Program-made: the position numbers and the translations under genes
Part shown: piece after piece, positions 1-63,611 of the stretch
How positions within the stretch are numbered: position 1 is the stretch's first letter
Layout of the letters: every line of letters starts with the position of its first letter
Origin: Macrostomum lignano
Taxonomy: Eukaryota
DNA length: 64,000 nucleotides
Assembly (NCBI GenBank): GCA_002269645.1
Contig: NIVC01000391.1
Coordinates: forward strand, 434,001 to 498,000
Reading direction: 5' to 3'
The notes under the pieces: generated by a model
What the model was told of the DNA's origin: nothing
Database searches by the model: none
What the model saw: only the letters and a program-made list of their open reading frames with translations

Positions 1-13
1 AAAATCTCTAATT

Positions 14-3012: not shown

Positions 3013-4270
<1,258 letters not shown>

Positions 4271-4317
4271 CCTGAGGTTACACGTCATTCACAAAAAGAG
4301 TTTTAAGTAAATATAGC

Positions 4318-8605: not shown

Positions 8606-10185
<1,580 letters not shown>

Positions 10186-11347
10186 GATTGCAACTCGTTT
10201 TCTTCGTTTTAAACTATACGAATAATTGCAGCTAAGATGAAAGCTGAGGTACCGTTTAAAAAAGCTTGGCTTGAAGCCACAGTAGTCATAGTAACAATGG
10301 GCTGAGCGAGCGTACACTGCAAGTTGAGCAGAGCTGACCTGAATGAGGCTGGGAAATGTTCATTGAGCCGCATGGACTGGGTAGAACTCTTCTCTATGCA
10401 AGCTTTTCTTTCTGGCTCTTTTTAAAGCGTTTCATTCCTTGGCTGAACTGCACCTCGCGACCTGTTCAGTGGAGCATGAATGTACTTAGTTTTCCAGAGT
10501 GCGTAGGCTGCTTGGGTTGAAGCGCTCTACATTCGTCCGCCGTCACTGGCTCTAATCAAAGTTAATCTGCTGACGACTTATTTAAGCATATGGGTAAAAT
10601 TGGTAAAAAATTTTTGTCTGGCCCGTATATTTCACTGCGAGAGCAAAAGGAATGAATGGATTCAGTAAGTAACGTTTCGGAACACAGAATGATGGCTGGA
10701 GAAGTTCATCAATATTTACCACAAGTACATGGTCAGCTCTTCTGCGTCAGTTCCCGAATCATTTGGAATGCTTGGGTTGTACAATTCTGCGTCAATCAAC
10801 TGCTGCAGAAACTCCTCATAGTATTAGCTTCTTTGAAGAAGAAGAGGAAGAATTTATGGTTCTACATGCAGCTCGATCGCTACTCAAAATAGTACATTCT
10901 TATTAATTTGCACATTACATGTACATGTGCATGTAGTGCACAGAAATTCTCCTTATGAACTGCATGCACGAGCGTACAGGTGATTTTGACGTTCTGACAT
11001 CAAATGATTCCGGGCCGTCGACCATTTAAATTTTAATACGTTGTGATCAGAGGCGTCGCCACGGGGGGGGGACAGAGGGGGACGTGTCCCCCCCCTCCCC
11101 CAGTAAAAGGTAAAAGATATGGGGGGACATACCCTCCTTGTGCCCCACCCCACCTTGTGACGCGTTATGGAAATCAATAATTTTGCTGCAGGGCGACAAA
11201 AAATAGCGTCTGCGGCGCCAAAATGATTACCTGCGGCCCCAAAATGAGTGCCTGCGGCGCCAGAATGATCGTGCCTGCGGCGCTAAAATGAGTGCCTGCG
11301 GCGTCAAAAATAAGTGTCTGTAGCGCTAAAATGAGCGCTGACAACAC

Positions 11348-13083: not shown

Positions 13084-14316
13084 ATGGCGCAGGACGGAGA
13101 AAATAGTCAAGAATCGAAGTCAGTTGAGATTAGGAACGAAGGCGAAATAGATGAGGCCGAACATTTGAGAACAGTAGTGAGAGAACTGCAGGATCGCATA
13201 AGAAGAATGGAAACCGAAAATCCTGAACCTAGAGTGATTTTGAAGTCGCATAACAGCGTAGCAAAGCCCAAGCCATACCGACTTGGCTCAGATTTCGAAT
13301 TGTTTCTAAGAATCTTCAACAACTACTGTCAAGGCAACAGTATAGACGAATCGGCTAAAGTGTATCAACTATTGTCGCTCCTAGACGAAGACGCCTACAA
13401 GGTTTACATTAACTTAGGCCTAGCGAGCACCGAATCATTTGAAAGCATCGAAAAGACTTTAAAGGACAAATTTAAGCCCGTAGGACAGAAGGAAGAAGCG
13501 AAGCTAGAGCTGATGAACCGCAGGCAGAAGGAAGACGAATCGTTAGAAGAATTTTACGACGCACTAGTTGAATTAGTTAGGAAGGCAGGACTAGAGAATC
13601 AGGCTCGAGAGCGAGTTTCTGAACGATTTGAAGCCGGCATAGCAAATTATAAAGTCAGGCGCGCAGTTATTGCCTATCGCAGAACGCATGAATCGAAGTA
13701 TCAGACTCAAGATTTACTGACTGCAGCAAAGAACGAGGAGATCCTCGAAGAACTCGCAAATCCAGGCAGTCAAAAGAATAGGAAGAAGCAGGAGGGCTCA
13801 AATACTTTGACAGCTCAAGTAGAAAAAGAGCAGAAAAAGCCAGCACCCAGCGCGGACCAAGGCCATCAGTCATTTGGACCTCAGTTTGCTTCCCCAGCCA
13901 ATTATCCTTCGCAGTACCAATCGTACCAGAATTATCAGCCTCAGTTCGACTACAGGCAATGGCAACCCAGGTTCGCCCATAGACAAATGAACCCAAGCTA
14001 TAGGCCACAGGCACCAGTGCAGCCTCCGAATAGCTTTCGGCCACAGCATCACATGAGCAGTTACTCAAGACCCTATAATCGGCAGTCTTCGCTATTTGCC
14101 AGGCCCGCCATGACACGCCCGCCACGCTTTGGTCACGAGGCCGGAGGGGCCAATGACAGGTTCAAACCTTCGGGGGCGAACGCGCCAAATGCGAGAAAGG
14201 CCTGTTATGAGTGCGGCGAAGAAACTCACCTGGCTAGGGACTGCCCAGTTAGACGAAATTCTTTAAACTACCGACGGGGCGGCACCAAGGGAGGGCCAAC
14301 CGCCCCCAGCCATTAA
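13084..14316 (+). CDS. gag: Gag (capsid-like region, Q/P-rich linker, one CCHC zinc knuckle), 410 aa
   Basis: Contains the knuckle CYECGEETHLARDC (CX2CX4HX4C); first long ORF after the PBS. Confidence 0.95.
   Translation: MAQDGENSQESKSVEIRNEGEIDEAEHLRTVVRELQDRIRRMETENPEPRVILKSHNSVAKPKPYRLGSDFELFLRIFNNYCQGNSIDESAKVYQLLSLLDEDAYKVYINLGLASTESFESIEKTLKDKFKPVGQKEEAKLELMNRRQKEDESLEEFYDALVELVRKAGLENQARERVSERFEAGIANYKVRRAVIAYRRTHESKYQTQDLLTAAKNEEILEELANPGSQKNRKKQEGSNTLTAQVEKEQKKPAPSADQGHQSFGPQFASPANYPSQYQSYQNYQPQFDYRQWQPRFAHRQMNPSYRPQAPVQPPNSFRPQHHMSSYSRPYNRQSSLFARPAMTRPPRFGHEAGGANDRFKPSGANAPNARKACYECGEETHLARDCPVRRNSLNYRRGGTKGGPTAPSH
14262..14306 (+). promoter_or_regulatory. -1 programmed ribosomal frameshift signal
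   Basis: Slippery heptamer T TTA AAC (14262-14268) in phase with gag, a 7-nt spacer, then a GC stem of GGGGCGG (14276-14282) pairing with CCGCCCC (14300-14306). The -1 frame is open downstream. Confidence 0.85.
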
Positions 14317-14933
14317 ACCGATTCACTCCCAATAGAAGAGCTGCAGCAGTAGAAGATCAGCAAGTTAGCTCAGGCAATGTAGAATATGGCAATTTAGTTT
14401 GGTATAATTATTACAGAGGCTACGGATTCCTGCGAGATAGCAATAATAGAGATATTTTCTTTCATGTGACTAATACTAACATAGCAACTGATTACGAAAT
14501 TATGCATTTTCTGCGCCAGAGGGCGACAGTAAAATTTATTCGCACTAACGATACTACTCATAGTAGGAAACAGAGAGCGGTCAATGTTAAAATTTGCTCA
14601 AGCGAGGAACGCAGATTAGCAGAAATTAACAAACAGAAGTCAGCGAGCTTAGCTAGACAGTCAGAGGCATTGACGAAAGAATTAGAGAAACGAAGCGAAG
14701 CTGCGGCAGCTCAGAGAAGCGCATTAAACAGCATAGACTTGCGACTTAGTGAAGTAGAAGGAAAGAAAGCTTCAGCGGACGAATCAAAGGTAGTAAAAGA
14801 ATTATCAGATCTAAGAACCGAATTGAAGGACTTGCGCCAATGCTTGGTAGGAAAAGTCCAGAAGAATCAGCGAAAGAAGAACCTGACAAGAGTGCGACGA
14901 CAGCAGAACTTAGAGCTGAACTTAGGGAAATGA
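14262..14933 (+). CDS. -1 frame continuation of gag: cold-shock domain (about 14382-14594) followed by a coiled coil
   Basis: Translation reads EYGNLVWYNYYRGYGFLRDSNNRDIFFHVTNTNIATDYEIMHFLRQRATVKFIRTNDTTHSRKQRAVNVKI, with RNP1 (RGYGFL), RNP2 (DIFFH) and the C-terminal AxNV strand. The ORF track shows only 14466-14933 and so misses the N-terminal half of the domain. Confidence 0.82.
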   Translation, partial: FKLPTGRHQGRANRPQPLNRFTPNRRAAAVEDQQVSSGNVEYGNLVWYNYYRGYGFLRDSNNRDIFFHVTNTNIATDYEIMHFLRQRATVKFIRTNDTTHSRKQRAVNVKICSSEERRLAEINKQKSASLARQSEALTKELEKRSEAAAAQRSALNSIDLRLSEVEGKKASADESKVVKELSDLRTELKDLRQCLVGKVQKNQRKKNLTRVRRQQNLELNLGK

Positions 14934-17900
14934 AGCAAGAATTAAGGAAGTTAGAGACAGCCATCCAGCGAGATGTGGCAGCTGAGAAGAAAGCGACAGA
15001 GAAGCAGGAGAAGACCGTAGAAGCAGATATATCTAGCCAATTAGTGAATTCAGGATTATTCCTCGATAGCCAGATTAACGGATTAAGCGAAAAAATATTA
15101 GTTGACACCGGCGCCTCGAATTGCCTAATTGATAGTAAATTATATCAGCGCCTCTATCCGGCAAATCATAGTTTGAAGCCATGCTCAGTGAATATGCGAT
15201 CCGCCAATGGCCAGACTTCAAATTTATTAGGCCAAGTAGCATTGCGCGTCAGATTCGGGGACTGCGAGATTACGCACCCATTCTATGTTGCTGAAGGCTT
15301 ACTAACGTCATCAATAATAGGCATCGACTTGTTAACTAGGCATAAAATTAAATTAGATATAGCAGGAAAATCCTTAGAATTTAGTGATCGCAGAATTCCG
15401 CTTGTAACAACGAGTGATGAAACGCGCTGTGTCCTACTGCAAGTAGTCAAGAAAGTATCTATAGCACCGATGAGCGAAATTTACGTCAAGGCTAAATGTA
15501 AAGATACTCCGGAAACTGCAGAACTCGGCTTCATTTCAGGCCGCAGTCAAATTAGCGAGAAAGATGAGCCATTAGTAGCAAAAGCTATTACTAGATTGGA
15601 CGAATTCGGCGAAACTTACGTTAGATTAATGAACCTGACAGAAGAGGCTCAGACAATTCATAAGGATGAGATAGTTGCGCAGTATCAACCGATGAAGGAA
15701 GAAGTAGAACTTTTCGCAATGTCAGAAACTGATTTAGAAGCAGGTGCGCGGAAGCAATCGAAGGCAGCAATTACGGTGCAAGAAGCTGATAGACTTAGGG
15801 ATCAATTCCGCTTAAACGAGACCGATTTAAGTGAGGCTCAGAAGAGAAAAGTAATTGAATTACTACATCGTTATCAAAATATAGTTTCGAAGGATCAGTG
15901 GGATATCGGCAAGACCCAGATGGGCGAATTCAAGATTGAGACTACCGATGAAATTCCAGTCAGAATTCCCCTGCGCAAGCAAAGCCCTGAGCAACGAGAA
16001 TTTGTAAGCGGGCATGTGCAGCAGCTATTAGAGCACGATTTGATTGAGCCCTCAGAATCTGAGTGGAGTTGCCCTATAGTTCTCGCCCGGAAGAAGTCCG
16101 GAGAATTCAGATTTTGCTGTGATTTCAGACAGTTAAATAATAAGACTAAGAAGGACAGTTTTCCGTTACCGCTAATTCAAGAATCGCTGGAATCCCTGGC
16201 AGGCAACATGTACTTTAGCACCCTAGACATGGTCGGCGCTTATTGGTCAGTGAAGGTCAGAGAGACTGACCGCGAGAAATTAGCGTTTCGAACCCATGAT
16301 GGCCTGTTCCAGTGGAAAGTTTTGCCTTTCGGAGTCACGAATGGACCCGCTTGTTTTCAGCGTATAATGCAGAAGATCTTAGGCGATTACGCTTATAAGT
16401 TCGCCTTACTCTACCTAGATGATGTAATTTGCACAGGCAAGAATTTCGAAGAAATGCTCAGTAATTTAGAATTAATTTTCTCTCGATTAGCAGATGCTGG
16501 AATGAAAATCAAGCCAGAGAAGACCTTTCTGTTTCGGAAAGAAGTCACCTTCCTAGGGCACACCGTCTATCAACACGGTATCTATACCAGCAAAGATAAG
16601 ATAGAAAAAGTCCAGACATGGCCCCGGCCAGAGAATATCTCTGAGCTGCGCGGATTCTTAGGCTTAGCCGGCTACTATCGCAGATTTATTAAAGATTTTG
16701 CGCGAATAAGTGAGCCCTTGAATAATTTAACTAGAAAAGATGTCAAGTATAAGTGGGATGACAGTTGCCAGAAGGCATTCGATCTTTTAAAGCAGAAGCT
16801 AGTAAGCGCACCTGTGCTGAGCTACCCCAGGTTCGATAGCGACGCGGGACCGTTCATCCTCGATGTCGACGCCTGTGACGTAGCTATAGGTGGAAATTTA
16901 TTACAAGAGCAAGATGGGGAAGAAAAAGTAATAGCCTATGCTTCGCATCCGTTAAATGAGCATCAGTTGAATTACTGCACTACGATGAAGGAAATGTTTG
17001 CGCTGATATATTTCTTAGAACATTACCGGCCTTATCTGGTCGGCCGTCGTTTCAAGGTCAGGACAGACCACGCGGCCCTCCAATGGCTACGCAAGTGCCA
17101 CGGTGCAAAAGGCATGCTAGGCAGATGGAACATGATCCTTGAGCAGTTTGATCAATTTGAAGTAATTTCGAGAATGGAGGAATATGACTTTGCAATTCAG
17201 TACCGCCAAGGGATCGCCCATGGTAACGCAGACGCCCTGAGTCGCAGACCTCAGCGGGATGGTCCCCCGAAACGCTACCATGAGGAATGCCCCACTTGCA
17301 GTGCGACGAAGACAGCAACAGTCCACTGCGGTGCAATTAATATCGATACGCCAGCAGGAATTGTAGAACTGCAGGAGAGCCAGCCAGAGTTGCTGCTGCT
17401 CAAGCAAAAGCTCAGACAGGGAGAGCCCTGTCCACCCAAGAATGAATGGGTTGGAATGAGCCGCAGTTATAAGTCATTATTTAGCGATTATGAGCAGCTA
17501 TTAGTGAAAAATGACATAATTTACAGGAATTGGATAGATTCCGAAGGCCGAAAATTTGAGCAGACTGTACTGCCGGAAAATCAAGCCCTGGAGCAGCAGT
17601 TGTTTAGAGCGTTTCATGATCAAATGGCTCACGGCGGTATTTCGAAGACTAAAGATTTGATTCGACAGAGATTTTGGTGGCCAAACTATTCAACGAACTT
17701 AGATAGATATATTAAGACTTGTACTGAGTGCCAGACAAGAAAGAAATACGGGCCGAAGCCACGAGCGCCCTTAGAACCAGAAGTCAGCAGTTACATGGGC
17801 GAGAAAGTACATATAGATTTCGCCGGTCCGTTCAACGCCACAGCACGGGGGAACAAGTACCTCCTGCTGATGGTTGATCACTTTACGGGCTGGCTAGAGG

Positions 17901-19039
17901 TAAAAGCGCTTAGAGATTGTACAGCTGAAAGTACAGCTTGGGCCCTGTACACAGAGTGGATCACTCGGCATGGTGCCCCTGAAGCATTCATATCAGACAG
18001 AGGTACATCGTTTACTGCAGAATTAGTGAAATCGTTAACCGAAAATTTCCGAATAGATTTACGCCATACTACTAGCTACCATCCGCAGGCAAACGGTCGC
18101 TGCGAGCGTATGGTCAGAGTAGTGAAAGATGGAATCAGATTAGCTCAGAGTGAACTCAGTTTGGCATGGGATGAGGTGCTTCCGCACGCTTTGATGGTTC
18201 AGCGAAGCACGGTCAGTGAAAGCAATAAATTTAGTCCGTTCGAATTAGTCTATGGTCGAAAGATGCGGCTACCGGTTGATGCTGAGCTCGGATTGCCTGC
18301 ACCGGAGCGCAAGACCCGTGATAAACATTTACATGATCTGTATAAGAAGTGCATGGAATCGTATAGAATCGCCAGAGAAAAGCAGCAAATATCAGTCAGG
18401 CGGCAGAAATCTAATTATGACACGAAAGTATTCCAGCAGTATTATCAGCCAGGTGACCTGGTCTGGATAACAAATACGCAGAATGTTATGATACGAATAG
18501 GAAATGGGTAGGTCCGTACGAGTGCTAGAAGTAAGAAATAATGGAAAAAATTTAAAATTGAACCCGGTCCAAAGGTTGACCGAATAGAGCAACCCGTCAG
18601 AATTCATGACGTAGTGACAGTAGACAGAACAAAGCCCTGCTACTTGTCAGAAGAAAAGTTGCGTCAATATCGAGAAGAGGAAGCTGGAAGTGCTAGTGAT
18701 GACGGCTCGGAGGAGTCAGAAAGAGTCCAAGTGGAGATTCAGAGGCCAGAGAGAATTAGATTTTTGCAACGTGAGAGAGCTCACGAAGCTACTGAAAGTA
18801 ATATAGATAGAACAGTCGAAAATACTCAGACAGCGGCCAATGCAAACCAGCAGGCGCAGGCGAGTCCTGCGGGGTCCCAGGCCAGGCAGAGTCCTGTGCG
18901 CACTCCACCGAATTTAATGCATCTGAGCCCAGTGCACAGTACGCCCCCGCAGCGGGCAGGCACGAATAACGTTAGCTGGATACCGCGGCTGCGGAACCGC
19001 GCGGCGATTAGACCCCCGGAACGATACGGTTATCATTGA
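14840..19039 (+). CDS. pol: Pol polyprotein (protease, RT, RNase H, integrase with GPY/F C-terminus); C-terminus broken by three 1-nt deletions
   Basis: Motifs: LVDTGA (PR), YLDD (RT), DVDACDVAIGG/DHAAL/NADALSR (RH), HHCC and DDE (INT). Three -1 shifts at about 18483, 18519 and 18551 restore KWVGPYRVLEV...VVTVDRTKPCY and join ORF 18614-19039, which ends RPPERYGYH. The pol frame is open from 14753. Confidence 0.95.
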
Positions 19040-23070: not shown

Positions 23071-47573
<24,503 letters not shown>

Positions 47574-50119: not shown

Positions 50120-50521
50120 GATGACTACCTGTGCAGATCAGTGCATCAGTACCTGTGCAGATCAGTGCATCAGTACCTGTGCAGATCAGTGCATCAGTAC
50201 CTGTGCAGATCAGTGCATCAGTACCTGTGCAGATCAGTGCATCAGTACCTGTGCAGATCAGTGCATCAGTACCTGTGCAGATCAGTGCATCAGTACCTGT
50301 GCAGATCAGTGCATCAGTACCTGTGCAGATCAGTGCATCAGTACCTGTGCAGATCAGTGCATCAGTACCTGTGCAGATCAGTGCATCAGTACCTGTGCAG
50401 ATCAGTGCATCAGTACCTGTGCAGATCAGTGCATCAGTACCTGTGCAGATCAGTGTATCAGTACCTGTGCAGATCAGTGTATCAGTACCTGTGCAGATCA
50501 GTGCATCTCAGTACCTGTGCG
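50120..50521. repeat. 24-bp tandem repeat (GTACCTGTGCAGATCAGTGCATCA)
   Basis: Near-perfect copies. Confidence 0.97.
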
Positions 50522-51003
50522 GATAATAGAAACTTTGTGCTTTCATACACGCATATTAAAATGGTAAAAGATAAATTGAAATTAGCCAGCAGTATTAGTG
50601 CACGGTGCAGTCTCGCCTTCACAGCTCTTCGCCCACGTGTTCAGCGCCGAAATCGAGGAAAAACGACGACGAGCCGCCAGGCGGTTCCGCTTGCGATGAC
50701 GGCTTTTTCCGGAGTTTCTCCTGCCGCCTGCCGCGACCTGGAGCAGATTTTGTAATTCTTTTTCAGCTGTAACTAAGCCCAAATATGAACTATGCGCTAA
50801 AACTGTTCTATTTAGTTATCGAAGCAATAAAAATGTCGGGAGGGCGGCGGGCACCTTGGCGCAACGCCTTTAGCGACATCGTCCCACAATCAGCGCTGAG
50901 GTAATTCCGCCAATCCCGCTGACTCAGTACACAGGTGCGCACTCATACGCTCACAGAGGTTATACACAAGGACAGCTTAAGTAGAAGGAGGAAGTAGAAG
51001 GAA

Positions 51004-52247: not shown

Positions 52248-53761
52248 TTACTCACCCGTCTCGCCGGCGCACTGGCACGCGGTGGCCTGAGCGTCGAGGT
52301 AGAACTCGCAGCCGAAGCCTTGCACTGTTTCGTAGAACAACCCGGCGATGCTCTTGCAGTCTGGGCATTGTGTCCGAAATGAAACTAATTATTTTTGTTG
52401 CTAGTGCGATTTTCGGTGACACAAAAGGCCGTATGCAGAAAGCTTAGTCCAGACTAGCTAGTCCGGACTTGGGTAGTTCAGTCTATAGTCTATGGTCTAG
52501 CTACCCTAGTTCTGCTATAGTAGACTGGTCTAACTTTGTGTTTCTGTATACCAAATCCAAGTCTAGACTAGCTTTTCAAGACCGGACTACCCTAGACAGA
52601 GCTTTCTGCATACGGCCCTTTGAGGCCTGCATATTCATTTACGAGTATAACTAGATGGGTCACTCACACCTGCTGAGTGCATCTGAGGATGTGTACAGCC
52701 TGTGAGACTGTGAGAGCTGAAACTCCCACCCTGTACCCTATAAGCCCTATCACACCTGGAAAAACTGGAGCTCACTGTGGTGTTCGCATCCTCAGTGGCT
52801 TTGTCCTAATCTCCAAAGGCCAATGACAACGCCCTGTGCTTACTGTCATAGTCCTTTGCATCCGGCAGTTGTCCCCTGGACCTCATTGAGTCGCACGCCT
52901 GGCTCAAGCAGGCTTTGAACTCGGATTCGCAGTCAGACTTGGCAGCATTGCAGGTGCCGTAGCAGATGTCGTGACGGTTGCAGCACTCGGTCACTGCGGG
53001 CAGCGCGCTTGTGTCCACCTGCATTGGGATGGATGGTGCGAACTGTTGAGTCTGTGACATTTAGATTGGGTGGTGTCTGTTAGATCCAAATGAGGCATTA
53101 CTACTGTACTGCTTAGATCGATTGGAACCAGGGTGTCTGCTTGATCTAAATCAGCTTGAACTGGTTCGTCTGCCGGATCTAGATCGGTGGTTCATCTTCT
53201 AGATCTAGATCGGTCGGTTGAAGCTGGTTCATCTGCCAGATCTAGATCGGTCTGTTGGAACTGGTTCATCTTCCAGATCTAGATCGGTCTGTTGGAACTG
53301 GTTCATCTTCCAGATCTAGATCGGTCTGTTGGAACTGGTTTATCTACCGGATCTAGATCAGTTGGAACTAGTTCATCTGCCAGATCTAGATCGGTTGGAA
53401 CTGAATTGTCTACGAGATCTAGGTCAGTTGCGACATGAGTGTTTGAAGTCTCTATTCGTGAGTCGGCTCGGCTCACGTGAAACTCTCGACTCCCGCAGCC
53501 GTTGAAAGTGGGCTTGTAGGCCGGCCTTGGCCTCGATGGAGCCCCGTCTGGGCACCTGAACCGGCACTGCTCTGCCTCTCCGCTGGCCCCGCCGACACCG
53601 CTGCCACCGCCAAGGAAGGTGTTGAAGACGCGCAGACTGTCTAGTGTGGCACCGAGCGACCCGAGGGACTCTTCGTCTTTAGCTGCCTGGCTCTGGCCGA
53701 GTGTCCAGGCCGTTAGAAGCAGTGACAGGCAGAGTGAGCAGACTGTGAAACGGAGTGACAT
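52248..53761 (-). CDS. PLA2G12A: Group XII secretory phospholipase A2, 190 aa, 3 exons
   Basis: Exons 53761-53477, 53018-52844 and 52360-52248 with matching phases (573 nt). Signal peptide, CRFRCPDG, NGCGS, the catalytic CCNRHDICYGTC (His-Asp intact), and C-terminal GCEFYLDAQATACQC. The last codons GGT GAG TAA could alternatively be a splice donor. Confidence 0.9.
52427..52617. mobile_element. Small MITE with 18-bp TIRs in PLA2 intron 2
   Basis: GGCCGTATGCAGAAAGCT (52427) and AGCTTTCTGCATACGGCC (52600-52617); no TSD seen. Confidence 0.6.
53110..53425. repeat. Degenerate tandem repeat of about 35 bp (GATCTAGATCGGTCTGTTGGAACTGGTTCATCTTCCA) in PLA2 intron 1
   Basis: Directly visible. Confidence 0.85.
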
Positions 53762-54990: not shown

Positions 54991-56261
<1,271 letters not shown>

Positions 56262-58727
56262 CCAGCGAGGCAATTCCGCGGAATTTCCCCGACTTTTCCC
56301 TGCGCCGAAGATCAATAATAACCAATTCAGTACAGTAAAGTGCAGTCTGTACGGAAGAAAGACTCCCTCTATCTGTATTCTCTGGGACTAAAATCTATTT
56401 TTCTAGCCCAAAGCTCCCGTGGCGCTTCTGCAAAACTTTTTTTTAAATATATAAACCCCTAAAAATAGTCGCAGGATCTGTCGTAAAGAACAGAATACTT
56501 TTCTTGTTTTTTCGTGGGCGATAAACTAACTATAATAATGCAGGGGTCGACAAACTCCGACGTACGGGCCACATGGTTCCGTTGAAACTTCAAAACAGCA
56601 ATCCGGCCTGCTCAAGGTTTGTCTCTTCTCAACTCTCTTCTCCCCTCCTCTCATCTCCTCTCTCTATTCTCTCTTCTTTCCTCTCTTCTCTCCCTAATTT
56701 CCGCTTCTTTGCTATCTCATCCGGCGCGCAGACACGAGCTCCATACGAGCGAGCGTATTGATGTCTGTTTCTCCCGGCAGTACGCACAGAGGGTGTTCCA
56801 CGCGTAGGGTTGGACGTAAAAATGTCAGTTTTTTCTCCCCGGTTGGGGCTGCTTTGGGCTGTTTTCCGCTCAGTTTCTCTATCATATTGACTGATCAGGT
56901 CTTGACTGATTCTGGCGTGACGTCACTGGCTATGCGCCGCCCGTATTTTTTCCTGACTGTTGACATTAACTCTTGTTTACTTGAAACTTGGAAAGCAACG
57001 AGTAGTTGGTTGTTCCCGGATTCCTACAGGATAAGTAAAGTTATTAGTACGCTCGTATTTACTACTACTAGTACGTTCACTATTTTTTGAATAAACTACA
57101 TGTAGCTTTTGAAATTGTTCAGTCACTTCTTAAGGAGAATTATGTTTAAAACAAACAAGCATCAGCCCAGAAGGCCAGCTATCTGACCTAAGATATCAGC
57201 ATCCCCTTTGAGTTTTGGCATCAAAGCCTTTTTTAAGCCACGGCTTGTCCCTAATTCTCCCTTTGATGCTTGGCCTACCAACAACTACCAAGAGGAATAT
57301 GTGTGGACTTTCCAACGACGAGTTGGCTTTTTTTGTCATCCGAGAGTCGAGCAATCGCTTTGTTCTGGAGTGGAGATTAACAATTTGGACGCGTCGTCCT
57401 GTACCGAAGTGCTGCCTGAGCCGACTAGCGATGATCTACAAATGCTGGACCGGATTGAGAATGAGTCTGTGCCGAAATCGACCGAGACTCAACGAAAACT
57501 TCACTTCACGCAAGATTCCCACAGTTTCTCAATGAGAAGGAGCTCTGCCTGCTCTGGAGAAGTGGATTAATTCCTGAACGATTATCTGAGGCTTTTCTAA
57601 TCGTCTCTTCGAAAGCAGGATGGAACACATACTACGCGCCAAAGTCTCTCATCTGTTTTCGTGCGGCCATTCAACAGCACCTGGAATCCCCGTCCGTCAA
57701 TCGCCAGGTGAACAAGTAAAACAAGACTGCTTAGTTATTCGCTTTTGTCCTTACGAACTTATTTCTGACAGTGGAACAAAATTACTCCGTTGTTTTTTGT
57801 TGCTGTTCGTCGTTGTATGCTTCAATTCAACAATCAACAATCTGAAACAGCCGGCAAACAATTGAATTGTTGCCGGAAGGCTTTACTGCCGAAAACCAGA
57901 GACAAAAGGGTACGAAGTAACGATAGTTGACTTTTTTCTCTTATTTCTTTTTATTGAATCGAAAGTTCATAGATCCTTCTACATGTACATGTATGAAAAT
58001 TTTCCACTTATCTCGGGTTATTGAGTAGTCCTTGAGCTGATATTGAAATCGTGACATTCGAACGAACTCTTAGTACACCTTTTTCCGTTCACACCTTTTT
58101 GTCCATCTTGCGAAACTCATTAAGCCGCTTCTGCCTCTGCCCTCATACCTTCATGTTTAAATTGAGCGCTGCGTGCCGAAATAGAATGCAAGTTTTGTTG
58201 AAATTGCGCAGCAAAAGGTGTAAACTTAATGTAATGCTTGAGAGTGTTGTTTGCAAGTAAAACTAACTCATAAGGATGTCTCAGTCAGGTGACAGTATTC
58301 TCTGTCATGTGAAGCGCCCCCATAGAGAGAGCTTGAACGGAGAAAAACAAGATGAAAACTTGTCAAGCCGTTTACAAAAATATCTACATTTCCTTCGCAA
58401 GGCCACGCGGTGGCGCGCCTCAACGAGCGTGAGTGGAAAAATATTCCTTGGAAAACAAAATGCGATCCGGCTGTCTGTGCTCAACTAACTTGGATGTCAA
58501 TAGGTTGCCGTGGCGTAAAAATATTTACATCACTTCTGCCAGCTGCGGAGGAATTGTTTGGTCAAATGTGCTCTGCCTCTGTTTTGGTAAAACGCATTGC
58601 TCAATAGGAAGCATTTGTCTATAAATATCTCGTAGGTCGGCAGTAAAGGAATTTCAGCATGCTCAATAGGAAAAACGATAGACAAAGTAGATAGAAATCT
58701 TTGCTCAGGACAAAGCTTGCGAACTAC

Positions 58728-60908
58728 ATGGCGGGCCAAACTGGTGAGTGAGCAAACTGAGATTAGTCAGTTAATCCCTGGTGATGAGATCTGCTCTAAC
58801 AGTTCATTTTAAGCCAGGCTTTGTAGATTTGAAGTGTTAAATTCGGTTTCTAACTTTGTTTTTTCAGATAAGTTTCTTTTGCTTTTAATTGAGCTGCTGC
58901 TTGTTGGTCGCCTGTGTCACTGCGTCCCGACAGAACGTGAGTAATGACTGCTTTGCGCAGACCCGCATGCTCTGTACGTTAACGAGATAAAAATTCAATA
59001 TTTTCCCCTAGATAGCTGCACTGATCCACCCGAAATCTCGACTTTAGGACCTGAAGCCTCGACTGCCCGACCTGTAGCCTCGACTGCCCGACCTGTAGCC
59101 TCGACTGCCCGACCTGTAGCCTCGACTGCCCGACCTGTAGCCTCGACTGCCCGACCTGTAGCCTCGACCGCCCGACCTGAAGCTTCAACTGCTCGACCTA
59201 AAGCCTCAACTGCTCGACTTGAAGCCTCGACCGCCCGACCTGAAGCTTCAACTGCTCGACCTGAAGCTTCAACTGCTCGACCTAAAGCCTCAACTGCCCG
59301 ACTTGAAGCCTCGACTGCCCGACCTGAAGCTTCAACTGCTCGACCTGAAGCTTCAACTGCTCGACCTGAAGCTTCAACTGCTCGACCTGAAGCTTCAACT
59401 GCTCGACCTGAAGCCTCGACTGCCCGACCTGAAGCCTCGACTGCTCGACCTGTAGCCTCGACTGCCCGACCTGTAGCCTCGACTGCCCGACCTGTAGCCT
59501 CGACTGCCCGACTTAAGCCTCGACCGCCCGACCTGAAGCTTCAACTGCTCGACCTGAAGCTTCAACTGCTCGACCTAAAGCCTCAACTGCTCGACTTGAA
59601 GCCTCGACCGCCCGACCTGAAGCTTCAACTGCTCGACCTAAAGCCTCAACTGCCCGACTTGAAGCCTCGACTGCCCGACCTGAAGCTTCAACTGCTCGAC
59701 CTGAAGCTTCAACTGCTCGACCTGAAGCTTCAACTGCTCGACCTGAAGCTTCAACTGCTCGACCTAAAGCCTCGACTGCCCGACCTGAAGCCTCGACTGC
59801 CCGACCTGTAGCCTCGACTGCCCGACCTGAAGCTTCAACTGCTCGACCTGAAGCTTCAACTGCTCGACCTGAAGCTTCAACTCCTCGACCTGAAGCTTCA
59901 ACTGCTCGACCTGGTGCTTCAACTGCCCGACCTGAAGCTTCAACTGCTCGAGCTGTAGCCTCGACTCCCCGACCTGAAGCTTCAACTGCTCGACCTGTAG
60001 CCTCGACTGCCCGACCTGAAACATCGACTGCTCGACCTGAAGCTCTAACTGATCGACCTGAGTTTCGACTGCTCGACCTGAGCTTTCGACTGCTCGACCT
60101 GAGGTCTCGACTGCTCAAACTGAGGCTTCGACTGCTCGAAAGCCCACTGATCGTCCTGAATCCTGAACTGCTCGACCTGCTTGAACTGAGGCTTCGACTG
60201 ATCGACCTGAGGCTTCGACTGATCGACCTGAGGCTTCGACTGATCGACCTGAGGCTTCGACTGCTCGATAAGAGGCTTCGGCTGAATCGACCTAAAGCTT
60301 CGCCTGATCGACCTGAAGCCTCGACTGTTCTTCCTAAAGTCTCCACTGCTCGACCTGAAACATCGACTGCTCGACCTGAAACATCGACTGCTCCACCTGA
60401 TGTCTCGGCTGATCAACTTCGACAGCTCGAGCGTGAGATTCAACAGCTTGAGCGTGAGATTCAACAGCTTGAGCGTGAGATTCAACAGCTTGAGCGTGAG
60501 ATTCGACAGCTCACGCTCCTACTGTTCAAGCTGGATCGTCGACTGAATCGACCTGAAGCTTCGCCTGGTCGACCTGAAGCTTCGCCTGGTCGATCTGATG
60601 CCTTGACTGATCGAGCTGAACTTCGACAACTCGAGAAGATGCTTCGACTGCTCAAGATGAAGCTTCGACTGCTCAATCTAATGCTGGAGTCTCGACTGAA
60701 CCAGCTTCGACTGCTCGAGCTTCCATTGAATCGACCTGAAGCTTCGCCTGATCGAGCTGAAATTCGACAGCTCGAGCAGAAGCTTCGACAGCTCGAGCTG
60801 ATGCTTCGACTGCTCGAGCAGATGCTTCGACTGCTCGAGCAGATGCTTCGACTGCTTGAGCAGATGCTTCGACCGAATCGACCTGAAGCGCCACCTTTTC
60901 TTGTCTGA
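58728..60908 (+). CDS. Uncharacterised secreted repeat protein, about 660 aa: signal peptide, about 48 RPEASTA-type heptads, four Leu-rich coiled-coil blocks
   Basis: Exons 58728-58743, 58868-58936 and 59012-60908; both introns are phase-1 GTGAGT..AG. The N-terminus reads MAGQTDKFLLLLIELLLVGRLCHC-VPTEHSCTDPPEISTLG. Repeat variation is concentrated at third codon positions of the RPEASTA frame (GCC/GCT, TCG/TCA, ACT/ACC). One 20-nt unit at about 59514 (CTT[G]AA) breaks the frame as assembled. Confidence 0.8.
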
Positions 60909-61028
60909 CCTACTGTAATCCGCATTACTGAATCACTGATTGCAAATTTCATTGACAATATCTTTTGTCCTGCCGACTTGATTTGTGATACTGACCTACT
61001 GACTCATATCGACTCGAGTTCGCATGTA

Positions 61029-62639
61029 TACTCAGCAACATCGAAAAGTCACCATCACAGAAGATTCCGTCTGTGGTCGCCACTTTTGAGAGTGCAGGTA
61101 AGTCTCTCAATCTTTACGAGTGACGCAACTCAGCTACGCCGCGGCAGACTTGAGTCGAGGAATGAAGTGGGGGAGCGGTATGCGAGGGCTGGACGGATTA
61201 AAGCCACCCGGATCAGCTTTCTCGTATCTTTTATTTCAGATTAGTCCAAGAGAAATTGCTCACTGGCGCATAGAGTGGCGACTTTTCAATGTTTCTGAGT
61301 ATAGTTTGCTGCGTCATGACGTCTAGCATTATCTACTGTTCTGTTACCACTTATTGCCGTCAAAATTTTAGCAACATTTGAACTTACTGTAGTGTACGCC
61401 CCCTCTATGCCTTCATGCTTTTCTCTGACTCTAGCTCACGCAACCAACGTTCACTAGCTCTGGCCCCTCAAACTATTACCTAACATTGTAAAGAACTTTT
61501 ATCCAGACATTGCAATCTCTAGAGCGTTATGGGCATTCATTCAAGCATACAAACCTTAGAGATTTAGTATATTTAGATTTAGTACTCGTATATTTTAGAC
61601 TAGCAATCTAGTGCCCCCCTTTGGGACGGCCAATAAGCAAGTCTTGACATCTCAGCAATTCCCCAAGTCTTGACATCTCAGCAATTCTCCAAGTTTTGAC
61701 ATCTCAGCAACTCCCCAAGTCTTGACATTCTTAGCAATTCCTTAAGTCTTGACATCTCAGCAATTCCCCAAGTCTTGACATCTCAGCAACTTCCCAAGTC
61801 TTGACATCTCAGCAATTCCCCAAGTCTTGACATCTCAGCGATTGCCCCCGTAAGCCTTTTAAATGAGTTGTCTGTCTGTGTGCGATTGATTTAGCAAAAA
61901 CGGCTCAACCGATTTTCTTCAAACTTGCACCATTTGATCAAATTTTTTTGTTGACGGTACATGTGTCGTGGCTAAGAAGTTTCTCAATGCTAAGTGGATT
62001 AAATATTCGAAAAACGTGCTTTTTTGCAAAGGTAAAGCGAAAGTTTTCGACTTGAAATGCATTGTCAGAATGCTAGAGAAAAAACTGACTGACTGAATTT
62101 TGATTCTGATAAAGATAGCATCACAATATACTTTATATTTATCTTCCATTGACTGGCTGTGTTTATTGGTGACGCAATTCAAGTTGGATTACCGCTCAGT
62201 GTCGCAGCATAGCACAAGACTGCATTCCAGCTTCGGCTTGATTGACATTGCGTAACTATATTGTTAACTTTAACGAAAACAGATGAAGATGAAGACTAAC
62301 TGAGACATGTCCACGTGTAAAATTCGCAAACTAAATTTAAAAGCTGGAGAAAGGGAGAGGGAGCAACATTGATTGAAAAGTCGCCACTCTATGCGCCAGT
62401 GAGCAATTTCTCTTGGACATTCTGAAATAAAAGATACGAGAAAACTGCTCGGGGTAGCTTTAATCCGTCTAACCCTTGCACACCGCTCCCCCACTTCATT
62501 CCTCGACTCAAGTCTACCGCGGCGTAGCTAAGTTGCGTCACTCGCAAAGATTGAGAGACTTCGCGAGTGCCTGCACTCTCAAAAGTGGCGATCACAGACG
62601 GAATCTTCTGTGATGGCGACTTTTCGATGTTGCTGAGTA
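61029..62639. mobile_element. Tc1/mariner-type non-autonomous element A with TIRs of about 260 bp
   Basis: Both ends read TA|TACTCAGCAACATCGAAAAGTC; 61029-61290 is inverted at about 62375-62639. Confidence 0.8.
61632..61845. repeat. 26-bp tandem repeat (CAAGTCTTGACATCTCAGCAATTCCC) inside element A
   Basis: Directly visible. Confidence 0.9.
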
Positions 62640-62641
62640 TA

Positions 62642-63259
62642 CACTCAACAACAGTCAAAACCGCCACCCTACCGAGAGAGGCGACTTCTCTCTCACCTCA
62701 ACTGCAAGTGACGTAACTTGCGCCACGGCGTGGCTAAAGCTGGGTGAGAGTGAATTCCAGGGTGAGAGTACAAAAGGGACTGGGGTTGGGGTTGGGGGTG
62801 CAACAGTACACGTGACAATGGTCAGGCATATGACAGACGCTGAACGATGGCGCGCTGTTGGCATGCTAGAAGCTGGTGCATCCATCAGCGCAGTTGCTCG
62901 CCAATTTGGCCGATCACGTTCAACAATTCGAGCGCTGTTACGAAGTCCCAAGATACTGGTAGTGTTCAGCACGCAGCCATAGGCAGCCAGCGCCATGATC
63001 TCCGCGGCTCAACAGCCAGGGCAAATTGACGTCTGCTGCGGATTGTCAGGCGAACTCCGACCGCACCAGCCACCCTGTTCCGTCTAATGTGGGGTGAAAG
63101 AAGCAGATGGGGCATCCCCTGCATCCCCTGATTGCCCTTTCCTGCATTCACTCTCACCCAGCTTTAGCCACACCGTGGCGCAAGTTACGTCACTTGCAGT
63201 TGAGGTGAGAGAGAAGTCGCCTCTCTCGGTAGGGTGGCGGTTTTGACTGTTGCTGAGTA
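62642..63259 (+). mobile_element. Internally deleted Tc1-like element B with TIRs of about 115 bp
   Basis: Ends are TA|CACTCAACAACAGTCAAAACCGCC and GGCGGTTTTGACTGTTGCTGAGTA|TA; carries a transposase remnant. Confidence 0.85.
62830..63090 (+). pseudogene. Tc1 transposase N-terminal HTH remnant
   Basis: MTDAERWRAVGMLEAGASISAVARQFGRSRSTIRALLR / SQDTGSVQ ... RLLRIVRRTP, with a frameshift and a stop; no DDE domain. Confidence 0.8.
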
Positions 63260-63611
63260 TATATCTACTTGATTTGCAGCGCAAGCTTAATGCGACATCG
63301 CTAAAAACCATAGTGGCCTCTTTTGAGATATTTTTTAAAAATTCATATACAATATTCAATGCTTCAATGCATAAAGCCAAAAGTATGAGTTCAAGTTCGC
63401 TTTATTGCCCTCTTTTAATGACTCTTGTGCTTTTTCTCTAATTTTCTTAGTGAGAAAGTGCGAAAAAATCAGTGAAAAACTTGAAAAGATTAGTGAGAAG
63501 GAGAAATGATTAGTCAGAAAATATTTATTAAGAGCAGGAATACCGTATTCAGTACACCCCTGTGCGCCAATCAGCACTGCCCCTCAGTGCGGCCTTGCCA
63601 AGCCAGCTCTG

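What the first reader, a model, noticed from the sequence alone, without database searches (positions are those of the whole stretch)
58728..60908. Hidden secreted protein that builds two different domain types from one 21-nt repeat read in two frames
Seen in sequence: a clean 3-exon gene with a signal peptide. The unit CGACCTGAAGCTTCGACTGCT reads RPEASTA in one frame and DLKLRLL in the next. The ORF switches four times from the Pro/Ser/Thr frame into the Leu frame by a 1-nt loss, for example GAT CGA CCT GAG TTT CGA at about 60054, GAT CGA GCT GAA CTT CGA at about 60609, and GAT CGA GCT GAA ATT CGA at about 60750. Each time it returns through essentially the same junction, C(T/C)G AAT CGA CCT (LN-RP or PN-RP), and no stop occurs from about 59520 to 60908. 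The Leu blocks have diverged into amphipathic heptads (LRLIDLR, LEREIQQ, LRLLEQM) and have stops in the original frame. Inference: a coiled-coil domain arose de novo by compensated frameshifts in a mucin-like repeat, and the linker-plus-coil module was then duplicated. The product could be a glue, mucus, rhabdite or eggshell-type secreted polymer with an O-glycosylated stalk and an oligomerising end.
Basis: partly seen in the sequence, partly recalled or inferred. Interest (0 to 1): 0.85.

Follow-up and report, generated by a model that had tools for sequence, protein, structure and literature searches.

The report
Two-frame repeat gene, reading frame broken
A 1.86-kb array of a 21-base repeat in the flatworm Macrostomum lignano sits behind convincing signal-peptide exons and can be read as a Pro/Ser/Thr stalk and, one base over, as leucine-rich helices, but as assembled a single missing base separates the start codon from the long reading frame, and nothing yet shows that the protein is made.

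Summary
The sequence facts hold. A 21-nt array spans 59047-60905. Two of its three + phases are open: RPEASTA and DLKLRLL. Frame 0 is stop-free over 59517-60908 and switches four times into the Leu phase and back through the same junction. The "clean 3-exon gene" fails in one respect. The ATG exons are in frame 1, and a fifth, uncompensated 1-nt deletion at about 59512-59515 makes that reading stop at TAG 59809-59811 (294 aa).

The two introns look real: theirs is the only strict donor-acceptor-donor-acceptor chain in 128 kb. The four switches come from about 3-5 indel events copied by module duplication.

Frame 0 alone has no stop in the degenerate 852 nt; the other five frames have 2-29. However, substitutions show no codon-position bias. 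GC3 is 0.15-0.47 against 0.69-0.95 for neighbouring genes. No homologue or annotation was found, and 29% of the window is tandem arrays with mechanical ORFs.

The neighbouring cathepsin L gene carries a similar single-base frame break, so the deletion may be an assembly error or a mark of a decaying duplicate.

Best reading (confidence about 0.5): an unannotated secreted repeat-protein gene, intact until very recently. The claim of a de novo coiled coil remains a hypothesis.

The parts
58620..58627 (+). TATAAATA, a TATA-box-like motif about 100 nt upstream of the ATG
   Evidence: Read directly and found by motif scan. It is inferred to be a promoter element; this was not tested.
58728..58743 (+). 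Putative coding exon 1 (ATGGCGGGCCAAACTG), followed by a GTGAGT donor
   Evidence: It is part of the only strict donor-acceptor-donor-acceptor chain found on either strand of the window.
58744..58867 (+). Putative intron 1 (124 nt): GTGAGT ... TTCTAAC ... TTTGTTTTTTCAG
   Evidence: Its size and signals resemble the verified cathepsin L introns nearby.
58868..58936 (+). Putative exon 2, encoding DKFLLLLIELLLVGRLCHCVPTE, a signal-peptide-like hydrophobic stretch with one Glu in the core
   Evidence: No signal-peptide predictor was available.
58937..59011 (+). Putative intron 2 (75 nt): GTGAGT ... TTTTCCCCTAG. It removes two in-frame stop codons.
59012..59046 (+). Start of exon 3, the unique lead-in (HSCTDPPEISTL) before the array
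59047..59508 (+). 22 regular 21-nt units, phase a (RP[E/V/K]ASTA), in frame 1 and contiguous with the ATG
   Evidence: Unit map and translation.
59509..59528 (+). The single 20-nt unit. It lacks one base (CGACTT-AAGCC) and creates TAA 59514-59516 in frame 0. This is the uncompensated frame break.
59529..60053 (+). 25 regular units, phase a, now in frame 0. The ATG-initiated frame 1 reads them as DLKLQLL/DLKPRLP.
59809..59811 (+). TAG that ends the ATG-initiated ORF as assembled (294 aa). It comes from a Val-variant unit (CCTGTAGCC).
60054..60287 (+). Leu block 1. Frame 0 reads phase b after a -1 at 60061 (CCTG-AGTTT). It includes LRLIDLR x4 and an irregular stretch at 60137-60181.
   Evidence: AF2 predicts helices at residues 16-42 and 51-91 of the model, pLDDT about 80-91.
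60288..60410 (+). Linker 1, back in phase a through CTG-AAT-CGA-CCT (NRPKASPDRPEAST...)
   Evidence: AF2 gives pLDDT below 50 here.
60411..60548 (+). Leu block 2 (LRQ LEREIQQ x4 ...), with a canonical a/d heptad (I at a, L at d)
   Evidence: Only sub-threshold Pfam coiled-coil matches fall here. AF2 predicts a helix at residues 133-178.
60549..60611 (+). Linker 2 (RPEASPG x2 ...), phase a
60612..60731 (+). Leu block 3 (AELRQLEKMLRLLKMKLRLL...). The exit is a -1 at 60621 (GAA-CTT).
   Evidence: AF2 predicts a helix at residues 195-239.
60732..60752 (+). Linker 3 (RPEASPD), phase a
60753..60878 (+). Leu block 4 (AEIRQLEQKLRQLE LMLRLLEQ x4). The exit is a -1 at 60762 (GAA-ATT).
   Evidence: AF2 predicts a helix at residues 248-286.
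60879..60908 (+). Last degenerate unit (RPEAPPFLV) and the TGA stop at 60906-60908, at the very end of the array

Best explanation
This is the last exon of an unannotated, lineage-restricted gene of Macrostomum lignano. The exon consists almost entirely of a 21-bp minisatellite.

GENE MODEL. Transcription would start just downstream of a TATA box. Two short introns are removed. Translation from ATG 58728 gives a signal-peptide-like N-terminus followed by RP(E/V/K)ASTA heptads, a disordered Pro/Ser/Thr/Ala-rich, mucin-like stalk.

HOW THE TWO PHASES ARISE. The unit has no stop in two of its three phases. A 1-nt loss therefore does not terminate the protein. It turns RPEASTA into DLKLRLL, which is hydrophobic, Arg-rich and helix-prone. 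In the 3' third of the array a -1 indel, a +1 indel (the extra A in CTGAATCGA) and a second -1 indel produced a "PST linker + Leu block" module. That module was then duplicated, and each copy amplified its own 21-mer variant.

INTACT VERSUS ASSEMBLED STATE. The intact allele would encode about 725 aa: signal peptide, about 47 PST heptads, then four helical Leu blocks separated by short PST linkers. In the sequence as given, one further uncompensated 1-nt deletion at about 59512-59515 breaks this reading. The product would then be 294 aa: signal peptide, 22 PST heptads, 14 Leu heptads, stop. I take the deletion to be an assembly error, a null allele, or the first lesion of a decaying duplicate.

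SHOWN: the array, its phases, the indel map, the module homology, the splice signals, the frame break, and helix prediction for the Leu blocks.

INFERRED: transcription, splicing, secretion, translation of the distal part, and any function.
For: 1. SPLICE CHAIN. With strict definitions (GTRAGT donor; at least 11 of 14 pyrimidines plus YAG acceptor) the window has only 15 donors on the + strand and 18 on the - strand. The introns are 124 and 75 nt with GTGAGT donors, like the verified cathepsin L introns 3-4 kb upstream.
2. READING FRAME. The splice removes two in-frame stops. It joins an ATG and a hydrophobic exon to phase a, the only + phase open through all 47 regular units.
3. STOP COUNTS. 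In the degenerate 60054-60905 stretch (284 codons), + frame 0 has 0 stops. The + frames 1 and 2 have 20 and 29. The three - frames, which are all open in the consensus unit and share the same mutational history, have 2, 7 and 4. Counting distinct substitution events, frame 0 gained 0 stops in 53 changed codons, against 3 each in the other + frames.
4. CONTINUITY. The open frame is exactly the continuation of phase a from the regular array, and it ends at the array's last unit.
5. THE DELETION. The deletion-bearing unit is a single copy, not propagated, in an otherwise exact 21-nt register. The neighbouring conserved cathepsin L gene has the same kind of lesion. Its ATG, signal peptide and first 13-15 I29 propeptide positions are in one frame, and the rest is in another. 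Pfam I29 matches positions 16-59 alone at 57 bits, and 1-59 at 74.9 bits only when the two frames are joined.
6. STRUCTURE PREDICTION. AF2 (single sequence) gives helices with pLDDT 80-91 that coincide with the four phase-b blocks. It gives pLDDT below 50 in the longest phase-a linker and breaks between helices at the other two.
7. PUBLISHED GENERAL PATTERN. Frameshifted tandem repeats gain hydrophobicity and Arg, and disordered repeats often become predicted coiled coils (PMC12871928).
Against: - The ORF is not intact as assembled.
- GC3 is 0.15-0.28 in the RPEASTA phase and 0.47 in frame 0 of the degenerate part. Three verified genes of the window have 0.69-0.95. CCT, CGA, ACT and GAA are their rarest codons.
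- Substitutions relative to the consensus show no third-position excess, and the synonymous:non-synonymous ratio (10:43) equals that of the other frames.
- There is no homologue. The word-indexed search of 5.8 billion proteins gave one low-complexity hit. The exhaustive HMMER search of 1.84 billion representatives gave only compositional matches to the PST part, sharing at most two 6-mers.
- No Pfam family passes threshold, and no structural match has E below 0.3.
- There is no AATAAA within 1.5 kb 3' of either stop; the nearest signal is ATTAAA at 61197.
- Tandem arrays make up about 29% of this window and 15% of the genome (PMC5730564). Arrays elsewhere in the window give ORFs of up to 1162 aa in two or three frames.
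- The stop-avoidance signal is post hoc, about 0.025-0.05 for this frame and about 0.1 for any of six frames.
Confidence: 0.5

Rival explanations
1. The array is a non-coding minisatellite. It would be one of the many tandem arrays of this genome, and its long ORFs would be a mechanical result of a stop-poor unit. The four "compensated" switches would be one +1/-1 pair copied by segmental duplication. The upstream spliced exons would belong to a non-coding, dead or very short transcript that happens to run into the array.
For: - About 29% of the window is tandem arrays. Other arrays (3019-4270, 4846-6325, 6958-7682, 8865-9895, 27515-28175, 29763-33196, 50126-50524) give ORFs of 130-1162 aa in two or three frames and on both strands.
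- The same array gives stop-free runs of 897, 543 and 348 nt on the - strand.
- There is no codon-position bias.
- GC3 is far below that of real genes here.
- No homologues or annotation were found.
- The ORF from the ATG is broken.
- There is no nearby AATAAA.
- The return junctions share derived characters, so the switches are not independent events.
- In Nematostella, 37.5% of alternative frames over repeat segments are open (PMC2805694).
Against: - The strict donor-acceptor-donor-acceptor chain is unique in 128 kb of sequence. It sits directly upstream of the array, in frame with an ATG, with a hydrophobic exon and with phase a. My estimate of chance placement is below 1e-3.
- Frame 0 is the only one of six frames without a stop in the degenerate 852 nt, and it is the frame the gene model predicts apart from one base.
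- The phase path never enters the stop-bearing phase c across about 10 phase changes, which stem from about 3-5 independent events.
Confidence: 0.33
2. The gene is real and the assembly is correct. The true product would be the 294-aa protein ending at TAG 59809-59811: signal peptide, 22 PST heptads and 14 DLK(L/P)(Q/R)L(L/P) heptads. Everything 3' of the stop would be untranslated array, and the open frame 0 there would be coincidental or a relic.
For: - This is the literal translation of the sequence.
- The two-phase principle still applies: one uncompensated deletion converts the PST repeat into a Leu repeat without an immediate stop.
- It resembles the known MUC1 VNTR frameshift situation (general knowledge).
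Against: - The deletion-bearing unit is unique, and the units on either side are near-identical copies. The deletion is therefore very recent relative to array turnover.
- The distal 1.1 kb has not gained a single frame-0 stop, which is unexpected for an old 3' UTR.
- A similar single-base break in the adjacent conserved cathepsin L gene points to sequence errors or recent decay rather than a designed stop.
Confidence: 0.12

Closest known systems
Mucin-type / PTS tandem-repeat secreted proteins (e.g. the MUC1 VNTR, insect salivary glue Sgs proteins). This comparison rests on general knowledge.
   Same: A short 5' exon or exons encode a signal peptide. One large exon then consists of a minisatellite whose unit encodes a Pro/Ser/Thr/Ala-rich, probably disordered peptide. 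The array shows higher-order repeat variants and degenerates towards one end.
   Different: There is no sequence homology. None of the usual flanking domains (VWD, SEA, Cys-knot) is present. Ser+Thr make up only 2 of 7 residues, alongside charged Arg and Glu. Expression and glycosylation are unknown. The C-terminal third is read in another phase of the same unit.
Frameshifted protein tandem repeats (Osmanli ... Kajava, FEBS J 2025, PMC12871928)
   Same: That paper reports that shifting the frame inside tandem repeats raises hydrophobicity and Arg content, and often turns disordered repeats into predicted alpha-helical coiled-coil repeats. This is the RPEASTA -> DLKLRLL change seen here.
   Different: The paper analyses conceptual frameshift translations of reference proteins. 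Here both phases lie in one stop-free frame through paired -1/+1 indels, and the shifted blocks have since diverged and been duplicated.
MUC1 VNTR frameshift protein (ADTKD-MUC1) and MUC1-ARF (PMC5074479, seen; the disease allele is from general knowledge)
   Same: A single-base indel or an alternative frame inside a repeat array yields a long, different repeat peptide instead of a quick stop. The uncompensated deletion at 59512 does the same, giving 14 DLKLQLL heptads before TAG.
   Different: Those are pathogenic or alternative products of a well-characterised gene. They have no compensating second indel and no duplicated two-phase modules.
Ohno's [quoted passage not shown] (1984; general knowledge), and the open alternative frames of Nematostella repeat proteins (PMC2805694)
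   Same: Repeats built from a stop-poor oligomer tolerate frameshifts. 37.5% of alternative frames over Nematostella repeat segments lack stops. This explains why two phases are open here.
   Different: Those works describe the potential. This locus would be a concrete case in which the alternative phase is incorporated in the same ORF.
Ordinary non-coding minisatellites of M. lignano (simple and tandem repeats are 15% of the genome; PMC5730564)
   Same: The same kind of array, with higher-order repeat structure, sub-array amplification, mechanical ORFs on both strands and no codon-position signature.
   Different: This is the only array in the window preceded by a strong in-frame splice chain with an ATG and a hydrophobic exon. 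It is also the only one with a single frame kept open through a degenerate, indel-rich flank.

Membership tests
Protein-coding gene (generic criteria) | An uninterrupted ORF from a start codon through the claimed coding region | tested here: not met
   The ATG-initiated spliced ORF ends at TAG 59809-59811. The 59517-60908 ORF is in another frame because of the 20-nt unit at 59509.
Protein-coding gene (generic criteria) | Canonical splice signals joining the exons in frame | tested here: met
   Two GTGAGT donors and two strong acceptors form the only such chain in both strands of the window.
Protein-coding gene (generic criteria) | Codon usage like that of verified genes of the same genome | tested here: not met
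   GC3 is 0.15-0.28 in the PST phase and 0.47 in the degenerate part. The GPCR, cathepsin L and PLA2G12 exons have 0.69-0.95. The reference set is only 608 codons.
Protein-coding gene (generic criteria) | A substitution pattern showing purifying selection (third-position or synonymous excess) | tested here: not met
   Distinct substitutions fall 20:22:24 on codon positions 1:2:3. There are 10 synonymous and 43 non-synonymous changes, as in frames 1 and 2.
Protein-coding gene (generic criteria) | Avoidance of stop codons relative to comparable frames | tested here: inconclusive
   There are 0 stops in frame 0, against 2, 7 and 4 in the consensus-open - frames and 3+3 derived stops in the + frames. 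This is about p 0.025-0.05 post hoc.
Protein-coding gene (generic criteria) | Homologues or an annotated product; transcript evidence | tested here: not met
   No homologue was found. The transcript evidence itself is not testable with these tools. The neighbouring cathepsin L copy is also absent from the protein collections, so absence from them is weak evidence.
Mucin-like (PTS-domain) secreted protein | An N-terminal signal peptide | tested here: inconclusive
   MAGQTDK-FLLLLIELLLVG-RLCHC has the n/h/c layout but a Glu in the hydrophobic core. No SignalP-type predictor was available.
Mucin-like (PTS-domain) secreted protein | Long tandem repeats rich in Pro/Thr/Ser | tested here: met
   There are 47 heptads of RP(E/V/K)ASTA, with P+S+T at 3 of 7 and Ala at 2 of 7. 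The top HMMER hits are PTS-repeat proteins matched by composition only.
Mucin-like (PTS-domain) secreted protein | Dense O-glycosylation and secretion by gland or epithelial cells | not testable with these tools
   This needs biochemistry and in situ hybridisation.
Alpha-helical coiled-coil domain | Heptad periodicity with hydrophobic a/d positions | tested here: inconclusive
   LEREIQQ x4 fits a canonical a/d pattern. LRLIDLR and LRLLEQM have 4 hydrophobic residues per 7, which is more like a helical-bundle core. The 7-residue period is automatic for a 21-nt repeat.
Alpha-helical coiled-coil domain | A significant match to a coiled-coil family or a solved coiled coil | tested here: not met
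   Seven Pfam coiled-coil-type hits all fall below their gathering scores (16-21 bits against 28-45). The best Foldseek PDB hit has E 0.35.
Alpha-helical coiled-coil domain | Helical structure and oligomerisation | tested here: inconclusive
   The AF2 single-sequence monomer model has four helical blocks with pLDDT 80-91 and pTM 0.66. Oligomerisation is not testable here, and AF2 favours helices for Leu-rich repeats in any case.
Non-coding minisatellite | A tandem array with higher-order variants and mechanical ORFs in several frames and strands | tested here: met
Non-coding minisatellite | Absence of gene signals linked to the array | tested here: not met
   There is a strong in-frame splice chain with an ATG and a TATA box directly upstream.

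The most novel reading that the evidence does not exclude
The most novel reading is this. A functional, secreted flatworm protein has a helical, possibly oligomerising C-terminal domain that was born de novo from the +1-shifted reading of its own mucin-like 21-nt repeat. Paired -1/+1 indels fixed that reading in the ORF, and module duplication multiplied it. The precursor repeat, the shift junctions and the diverging products would all still be visible in one exon. The uncompensated deletion at 59512 would then show the first step of the same process, or be an assembly error.
Probability: 0.3. Interest if true: 0.75.

Novelty: new variant of a known kind. Interest (0 to 1): 0.42.

Why it matters
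If the gene is expressed and the distal part translated, this locus would be an unusually legible natural example of domain birth by frame switching inside a tandem repeat. That route was proposed on theoretical grounds (Ohno) and has recently been surveyed in silico (PMC12871928). Here the ancestral repeat, the junctions and the derived helical blocks lie side by side.

It would also add an unannotated secreted structural protein to the M. lignano model, in which transgenesis, RNAi and in situ hybridisation are routine.

If it is not expressed, the locus is a cautionary case. In a genome that is 15% tandem repeats, long "clean" ORFs and even compensated frame switches arise mechanically.

Tried and rejected
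- HOMOLOGUES. A word-indexed search with a signal + PST + Leu-block query gave one low-complexity hit, P0001. An exhaustive HMMER search of the 462-aa ORF gave 1329 hits. All are compositional matches to the PST part and share at most two 6-mers with the query. I rejected these as evidence of homology.
- FAMILIES AND FOLDS. Pfam gave only sub-threshold coiled-coil families. Foldseek of the AF2 model against the PDB gave nothing with E below 0.3.
- RNA FAMILIES. Rfam gave no hits anywhere in the window.
- SECOND COPY OF THE LOCUS. Exact look-ups of window ORFs found nothing. The public contig NIVC01003585.1, reached through the GPCR gene, is collinear with window 1-11259 at only 84-97% identity. 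By my arithmetic it ends before the finding would be reached. The repeat unit is absent from that locus and from the JGI metagenome contigs.
- OTHER COPIES IN THE WINDOW. There are no other copies of the array or of its flanks.
- REVERSE-STRAND GENE. Rejected. The - frames carry stops, and no splice chain exists on the - strand.
- TRANS-SPLICING AT 58868. I considered a leader-supplied AUG joined at this acceptor. That reading would hit TAA after 6 codons (read; the leader ending in AUG is from memory).
- CRYPTIC ACCEPTORS. Acceptors at Val-variant units (…CCTGTAG|CC, e.g. 59811/59812) would join exon 2 to phase a in frame 0 and bypass the break. They are much weaker than the 59011/59012 acceptor and remain untested.
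- NEUTRAL SIMULATION. I did not run a forward simulation of array evolution, because the result would depend on arbitrary duplication parameters. I used the - strand frames and distinct-event counts as internal controls instead.
Full report
WHAT IS IN THE SEQUENCE

A tandem array of a 21-nt unit (consensus CGACCTGAAGCTTCGACTGCT) runs from 59047 to 60905. TRF reports 59048-60889. The first 1.1 kb has 52 copies at 88% matches and no indels. The last 0.7 kb has 71% matches and 9% indels. A wrap-around alignment to the consensus gave a unit-by-unit map. The consensus matches 57 times at 3 or fewer mismatches, against 0 in shuffles, and nowhere else in the window.

In phase a the unit reads RPEASTA. 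In phase b it reads DLKLRLL. In phase c it has TGA. On the reverse strand all three phases of the consensus are open. Two open forward phases are therefore a built-in property of the unit.

Relative to frame 0 (coordinate mod 3 = 0) the units are in phase a from 59529 to 60053. They go to phase b at 60061 (CCTG-AGTTT), at about 60411-60427, at 60621 (GAA-CTT) and at 60762 (GAA-ATT). They return each time by one extra A in (C/T)(T/C)G AAT CGA CCT, at 60281, 60542, 60725 and 60872.

Frame 0 is stop-free from 59517 to TGA 60906-60908, which is 1389 nt and the longest stop-free run over the array. The others are 861 nt (+ frame 1) and 897, 543 and 348 nt on the - strand.

The three exons (58728-58743, 58868-58936, 59012-) are in frame 1, not frame 0. 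The first 22 units (59047-59508) are in phase a of frame 1.

One unit, 59509-59528, is 20 nt long. It reads CGACTT-AAGCC where its sister units read CGACTTGAAGCC. It also puts the ATG-initiated reading into phase b, where a Val-variant unit (CCTGTAGCC) supplies TAG at 59809-59811.

The literal product is 294 aa: MAGQTDKFLLLLIELLLVGRLCHCVPTEHSCTDPPEISTLG, then 22 PST heptads, then 14 DLK(L/P)(Q/R)L(L/P) heptads. The 1389-nt ORF has no in-frame ATG until about 60640. The gene is therefore not "clean". There is a fifth, uncompensated frame switch.

IS THE 5' GENE STRUCTURE REAL?

I think so.
- Both donors are GTGAGT.
- The acceptors are TTCTAACTTTGTTTTTTCAG| and TTTTCCCCTAG|.
- With strict definitions the window holds 15 (+) and 18 (-) GTRAGT donors and 73 and 61 strong acceptors. 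Exactly one donor-acceptor-donor-acceptor chain exists with plausible exon and intron sizes, and it is this one.
- It lies directly upstream of the array. It removes two in-frame stops. It joins an ATG and a hydrophobic exon to the only forward phase that is open across all regular units.
- My rough estimate of chance placement is well below 1e-3 (inference).
- A TATAAATA motif lies at 58620.
- Verified introns of the cathepsin L gene 3-4 kb upstream are alike, with a GTGAGT donor and lengths of about 80-100 nt.

ARE THE FOUR SWITCHES INDEPENDENT?

No. The four return junctions share derived characters: the extra A, and TTCGCCTG in place of TTCGACTG. Three exits share CTGATC(GAGCTG)AA-(C/A)TTCGACA(A/G)CTCGAG. 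One +1 and one -1 event were thus copied with a "PST linker + Leu block" module.

The first exit (60061) and a -2/+2 pair at about 60674-60716 are separate events. That gives about 3-5 independent phase changes, none of which enters phase c. After duplication each module amplified its own 21-mer variant: LRLIDLR, LEREIQQ and LRLLEQM, each x4.

IS FRAME 0 PROTECTED?

In 60054-60905 (284 codons) the stop counts are:
- + frames 0/1/2: 0, 20 and 29;
- the three - frames, which start stop-free in the consensus and share the same history: 2, 7 and 4, or 2, 7 and 2 counted as distinct events.

Counting distinct substitutions against the consensus, frame 0 has 53 changed codons and 0 stops. Frames 1 and 2 have 3 derived stops each. 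This gives P(0) of about 0.025-0.05 for this frame. Combined with the phase path it is about 0.003-0.013. For any of the six frames it is about 0.1 (my arithmetic, post hoc).

Set against this, there is no codon-position signature. Substitutions fall 20:22:24 on positions 1:2:3, and the synonymous to non-synonymous ratio is 10:43, as in the other frames. The only detectable constraint is "stay open".

CODON USAGE

Three verified coding stretches of the window have GC3 of 0.90 (GPCR), 0.95 (cathepsin L) and 0.69 (PLA2G12). The RPEASTA phase has 0.15-0.28, and frame 0 of the degenerate part has 0.47. CCT, CGA, ACT and GAA are the rarest synonymous codons in the reference set.

This argues against an old, adapted gene. 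It does not exclude a young one shaped by repeat amplification.

CONTEXT AND ORGANISM

The GPCR ORF at 14-1423(-) is 99% identical to BOX15_Mlig001214g1 of Macrostomum lignano. Window 1-11259 is collinear with contig NIVC01003585.1 of assembly GCA_002269645.1, but at only 84-97% identity. The window is therefore a diverged duplicate or comes from another assembly.

That genome is 15% simple and tandem repeats. It carries 180 Mb of duplicated blocks and was assembled from PacBio reads with Pilon polishing (PMC5730564).

In this window about 18.6 kb (29%) is tandem arrays, with periods of 4 to 70 nt. Many give ORFs of 130-1162 aa in two or three frames. A long ORF over an array is therefore no evidence in itself.

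AN INTERNAL CONTROL FOR THE DELETION

The cathepsin L gene 4.4 kb upstream is frame-broken in the same way. ATG 54991, the signal peptide and [13 protein letters not shown] are in frame 1, which then stops at TGA 55126-55128. The rest of the I29 propeptide ([15 protein letters not shown]...) continues in frame 0 across a GTGAGT intron.

Pfam Inhibitor_I29 matches profile positions 16-59 in the second part alone (57 bits). It matches the full profile 1-59 (74.9 bits) only when the two frames are joined.

A conserved gene with GC3 0.95 and no other defect thus also lacks one base. Either this assembly has residual single-base deletions, or the whole segment is a recently decaying duplicate. Both readings make the 59512 deletion unremarkable, and both are compatible with an ORF that was intact until very recently.

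EXTERNAL EVIDENCE

There is none either way.
- The word-indexed search found only a low-complexity mucin-like protein.
- The exhaustive search of 1.84 billion representatives returned 1329 hits. Nearly all matched query residues 1-180 by composition, and none shared more than two 6-mers.
- Pfam gave only sub-threshold coiled-coil families on the LEREIQQ block.
- This locus's cathepsin L is also missing from the collections; its best hit is 76% identical. The absence of an annotated product is therefore weak evidence.

STRUCTURE PREDICTION

AF2 (single sequence) on 60012-60905 gives helices at residues 16-42, 51-91, 133-178, 195-239 and 248-286, with pLDDT about 80-91 and pTM 0.66. These coincide with the four phase-b blocks. 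pLDDT falls below 50 in linker 1, and there are breaks between helices at linkers 2 and 3.

No PDB fold matches with E below 0.3. This fits the published finding that frameshifted repeats become more hydrophobic and Arg-rich and are often predicted to be coiled coils (PMC12871928). But AF2 predicts helices for almost any Leu-rich heptad, so this is not evidence that the protein exists.

VERDICT

My ranking is:
1. An unannotated spliced gene for a secreted PST-repeat protein whose intact form reads the same minisatellite in two phases. Here it is broken by one missing base (confidence about 0.5).
2. A non-coding minisatellite with mechanical ORFs behind a dead or non-coding spliced 5' end (about 0.33).
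3. A correct assembly with a 294-aa product (about 0.12).

The principle is known from Ohno, from the MUC1 frameshift and from Kajava's survey. A natural ORF with paired, duplicated phase switches would be a new variant of it.

The decisive data are RNA-seq junction reads, raw reads over 59512, and other copies of the locus.

Noticed in passing
window 54991-55478 (cathepsin L exons 1-2), break at about 55108-55118: The conserved cathepsin L gene is frame-broken by a single missing base inside its I29 propeptide domain. ATG, signal peptide and [13 protein letters not shown] are in one frame, which ends at TGA 55126-55128. The rest of I29 is in another frame. The full Pfam I29 match appears only when the two frames are joined. 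This is either an assembly indel error or a young pseudogene copy.
   Followed up: yes
window 1-11259 versus L001 (NIVC01003585.1, GCA_002269645.1): The window is from Macrostomum lignano. It is only 84-97% identical to the collinear public contig, with many gaps, and the arrays differ in length. It is therefore a diverged duplicate (homeologue) or comes from a different assembly. The window's own GPCR product is not on record in the protein collection.
   Followed up: partly
window 13084-18511 (+): A Ty3/gypsy-type LTR retrotransposon has long open gag (410 aa; Retrotrans_gag, zf-CCHC) and pol (1223 aa; protease, RT, RNase H, integrase) ORFs. It is apparently intact.
   Followed up: partly
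window 2224-53395, about 19 arrays (e.g. 3019-4270, 4846-6325, 8865-9895, 29763-33196, 35990-40145): About 29% of the window is tandem arrays with periods of 4-70 nt. Several give mechanical ORFs of up to 1162 aa in two or three frames and on both strands. An 11-nt array (4846-6325) reads as a 33-nt "LLRPCSDPAQT" protein repeat in all frames.
   Followed up: partly
window 61025-61290 versus 62372-62643; 62638-62755 versus 63146-63263: Two pairs of inverted repeats lie just 3' of the finding (273 nt at 91.6% and 118 nt at 97.5%). The first pair encloses a 26-nt tandem array at 61638-61848. They look like foldback or TIR-type elements. The only poly(A)-like signal near the ORF's stop (ATTAAA at 61197) lies inside the first arm.
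   Followed up: no
window 53188-53761 (-): An exon resembling group XII secretory phospholipase A2 carries its own signal peptide (the Pfam PLA2G12 match is below threshold). The ORF runs on into a 37-nt tandem repeat (53188-53395), which is probably intronic.
   Followed up: no
window 57300-57560 (+): A short open stretch (…LDRIENESVPKSTETQRKLHF…) recalls, from memory, Crypton/DUF3504-type domesticated recombinase N-termini. It was not tested.
   Followed up: no
window 58659-58694 (+): An upstream ATG with an 11-codon ORF (ATGCTCAATAGG…TAG) lies between the TATA-like box and the proposed start codon. The motif GCTCAATAGGAA occurs twice (58599 and 58661). It would matter for the start-site choice if the transcript begins upstream of it.
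   Followed up: no
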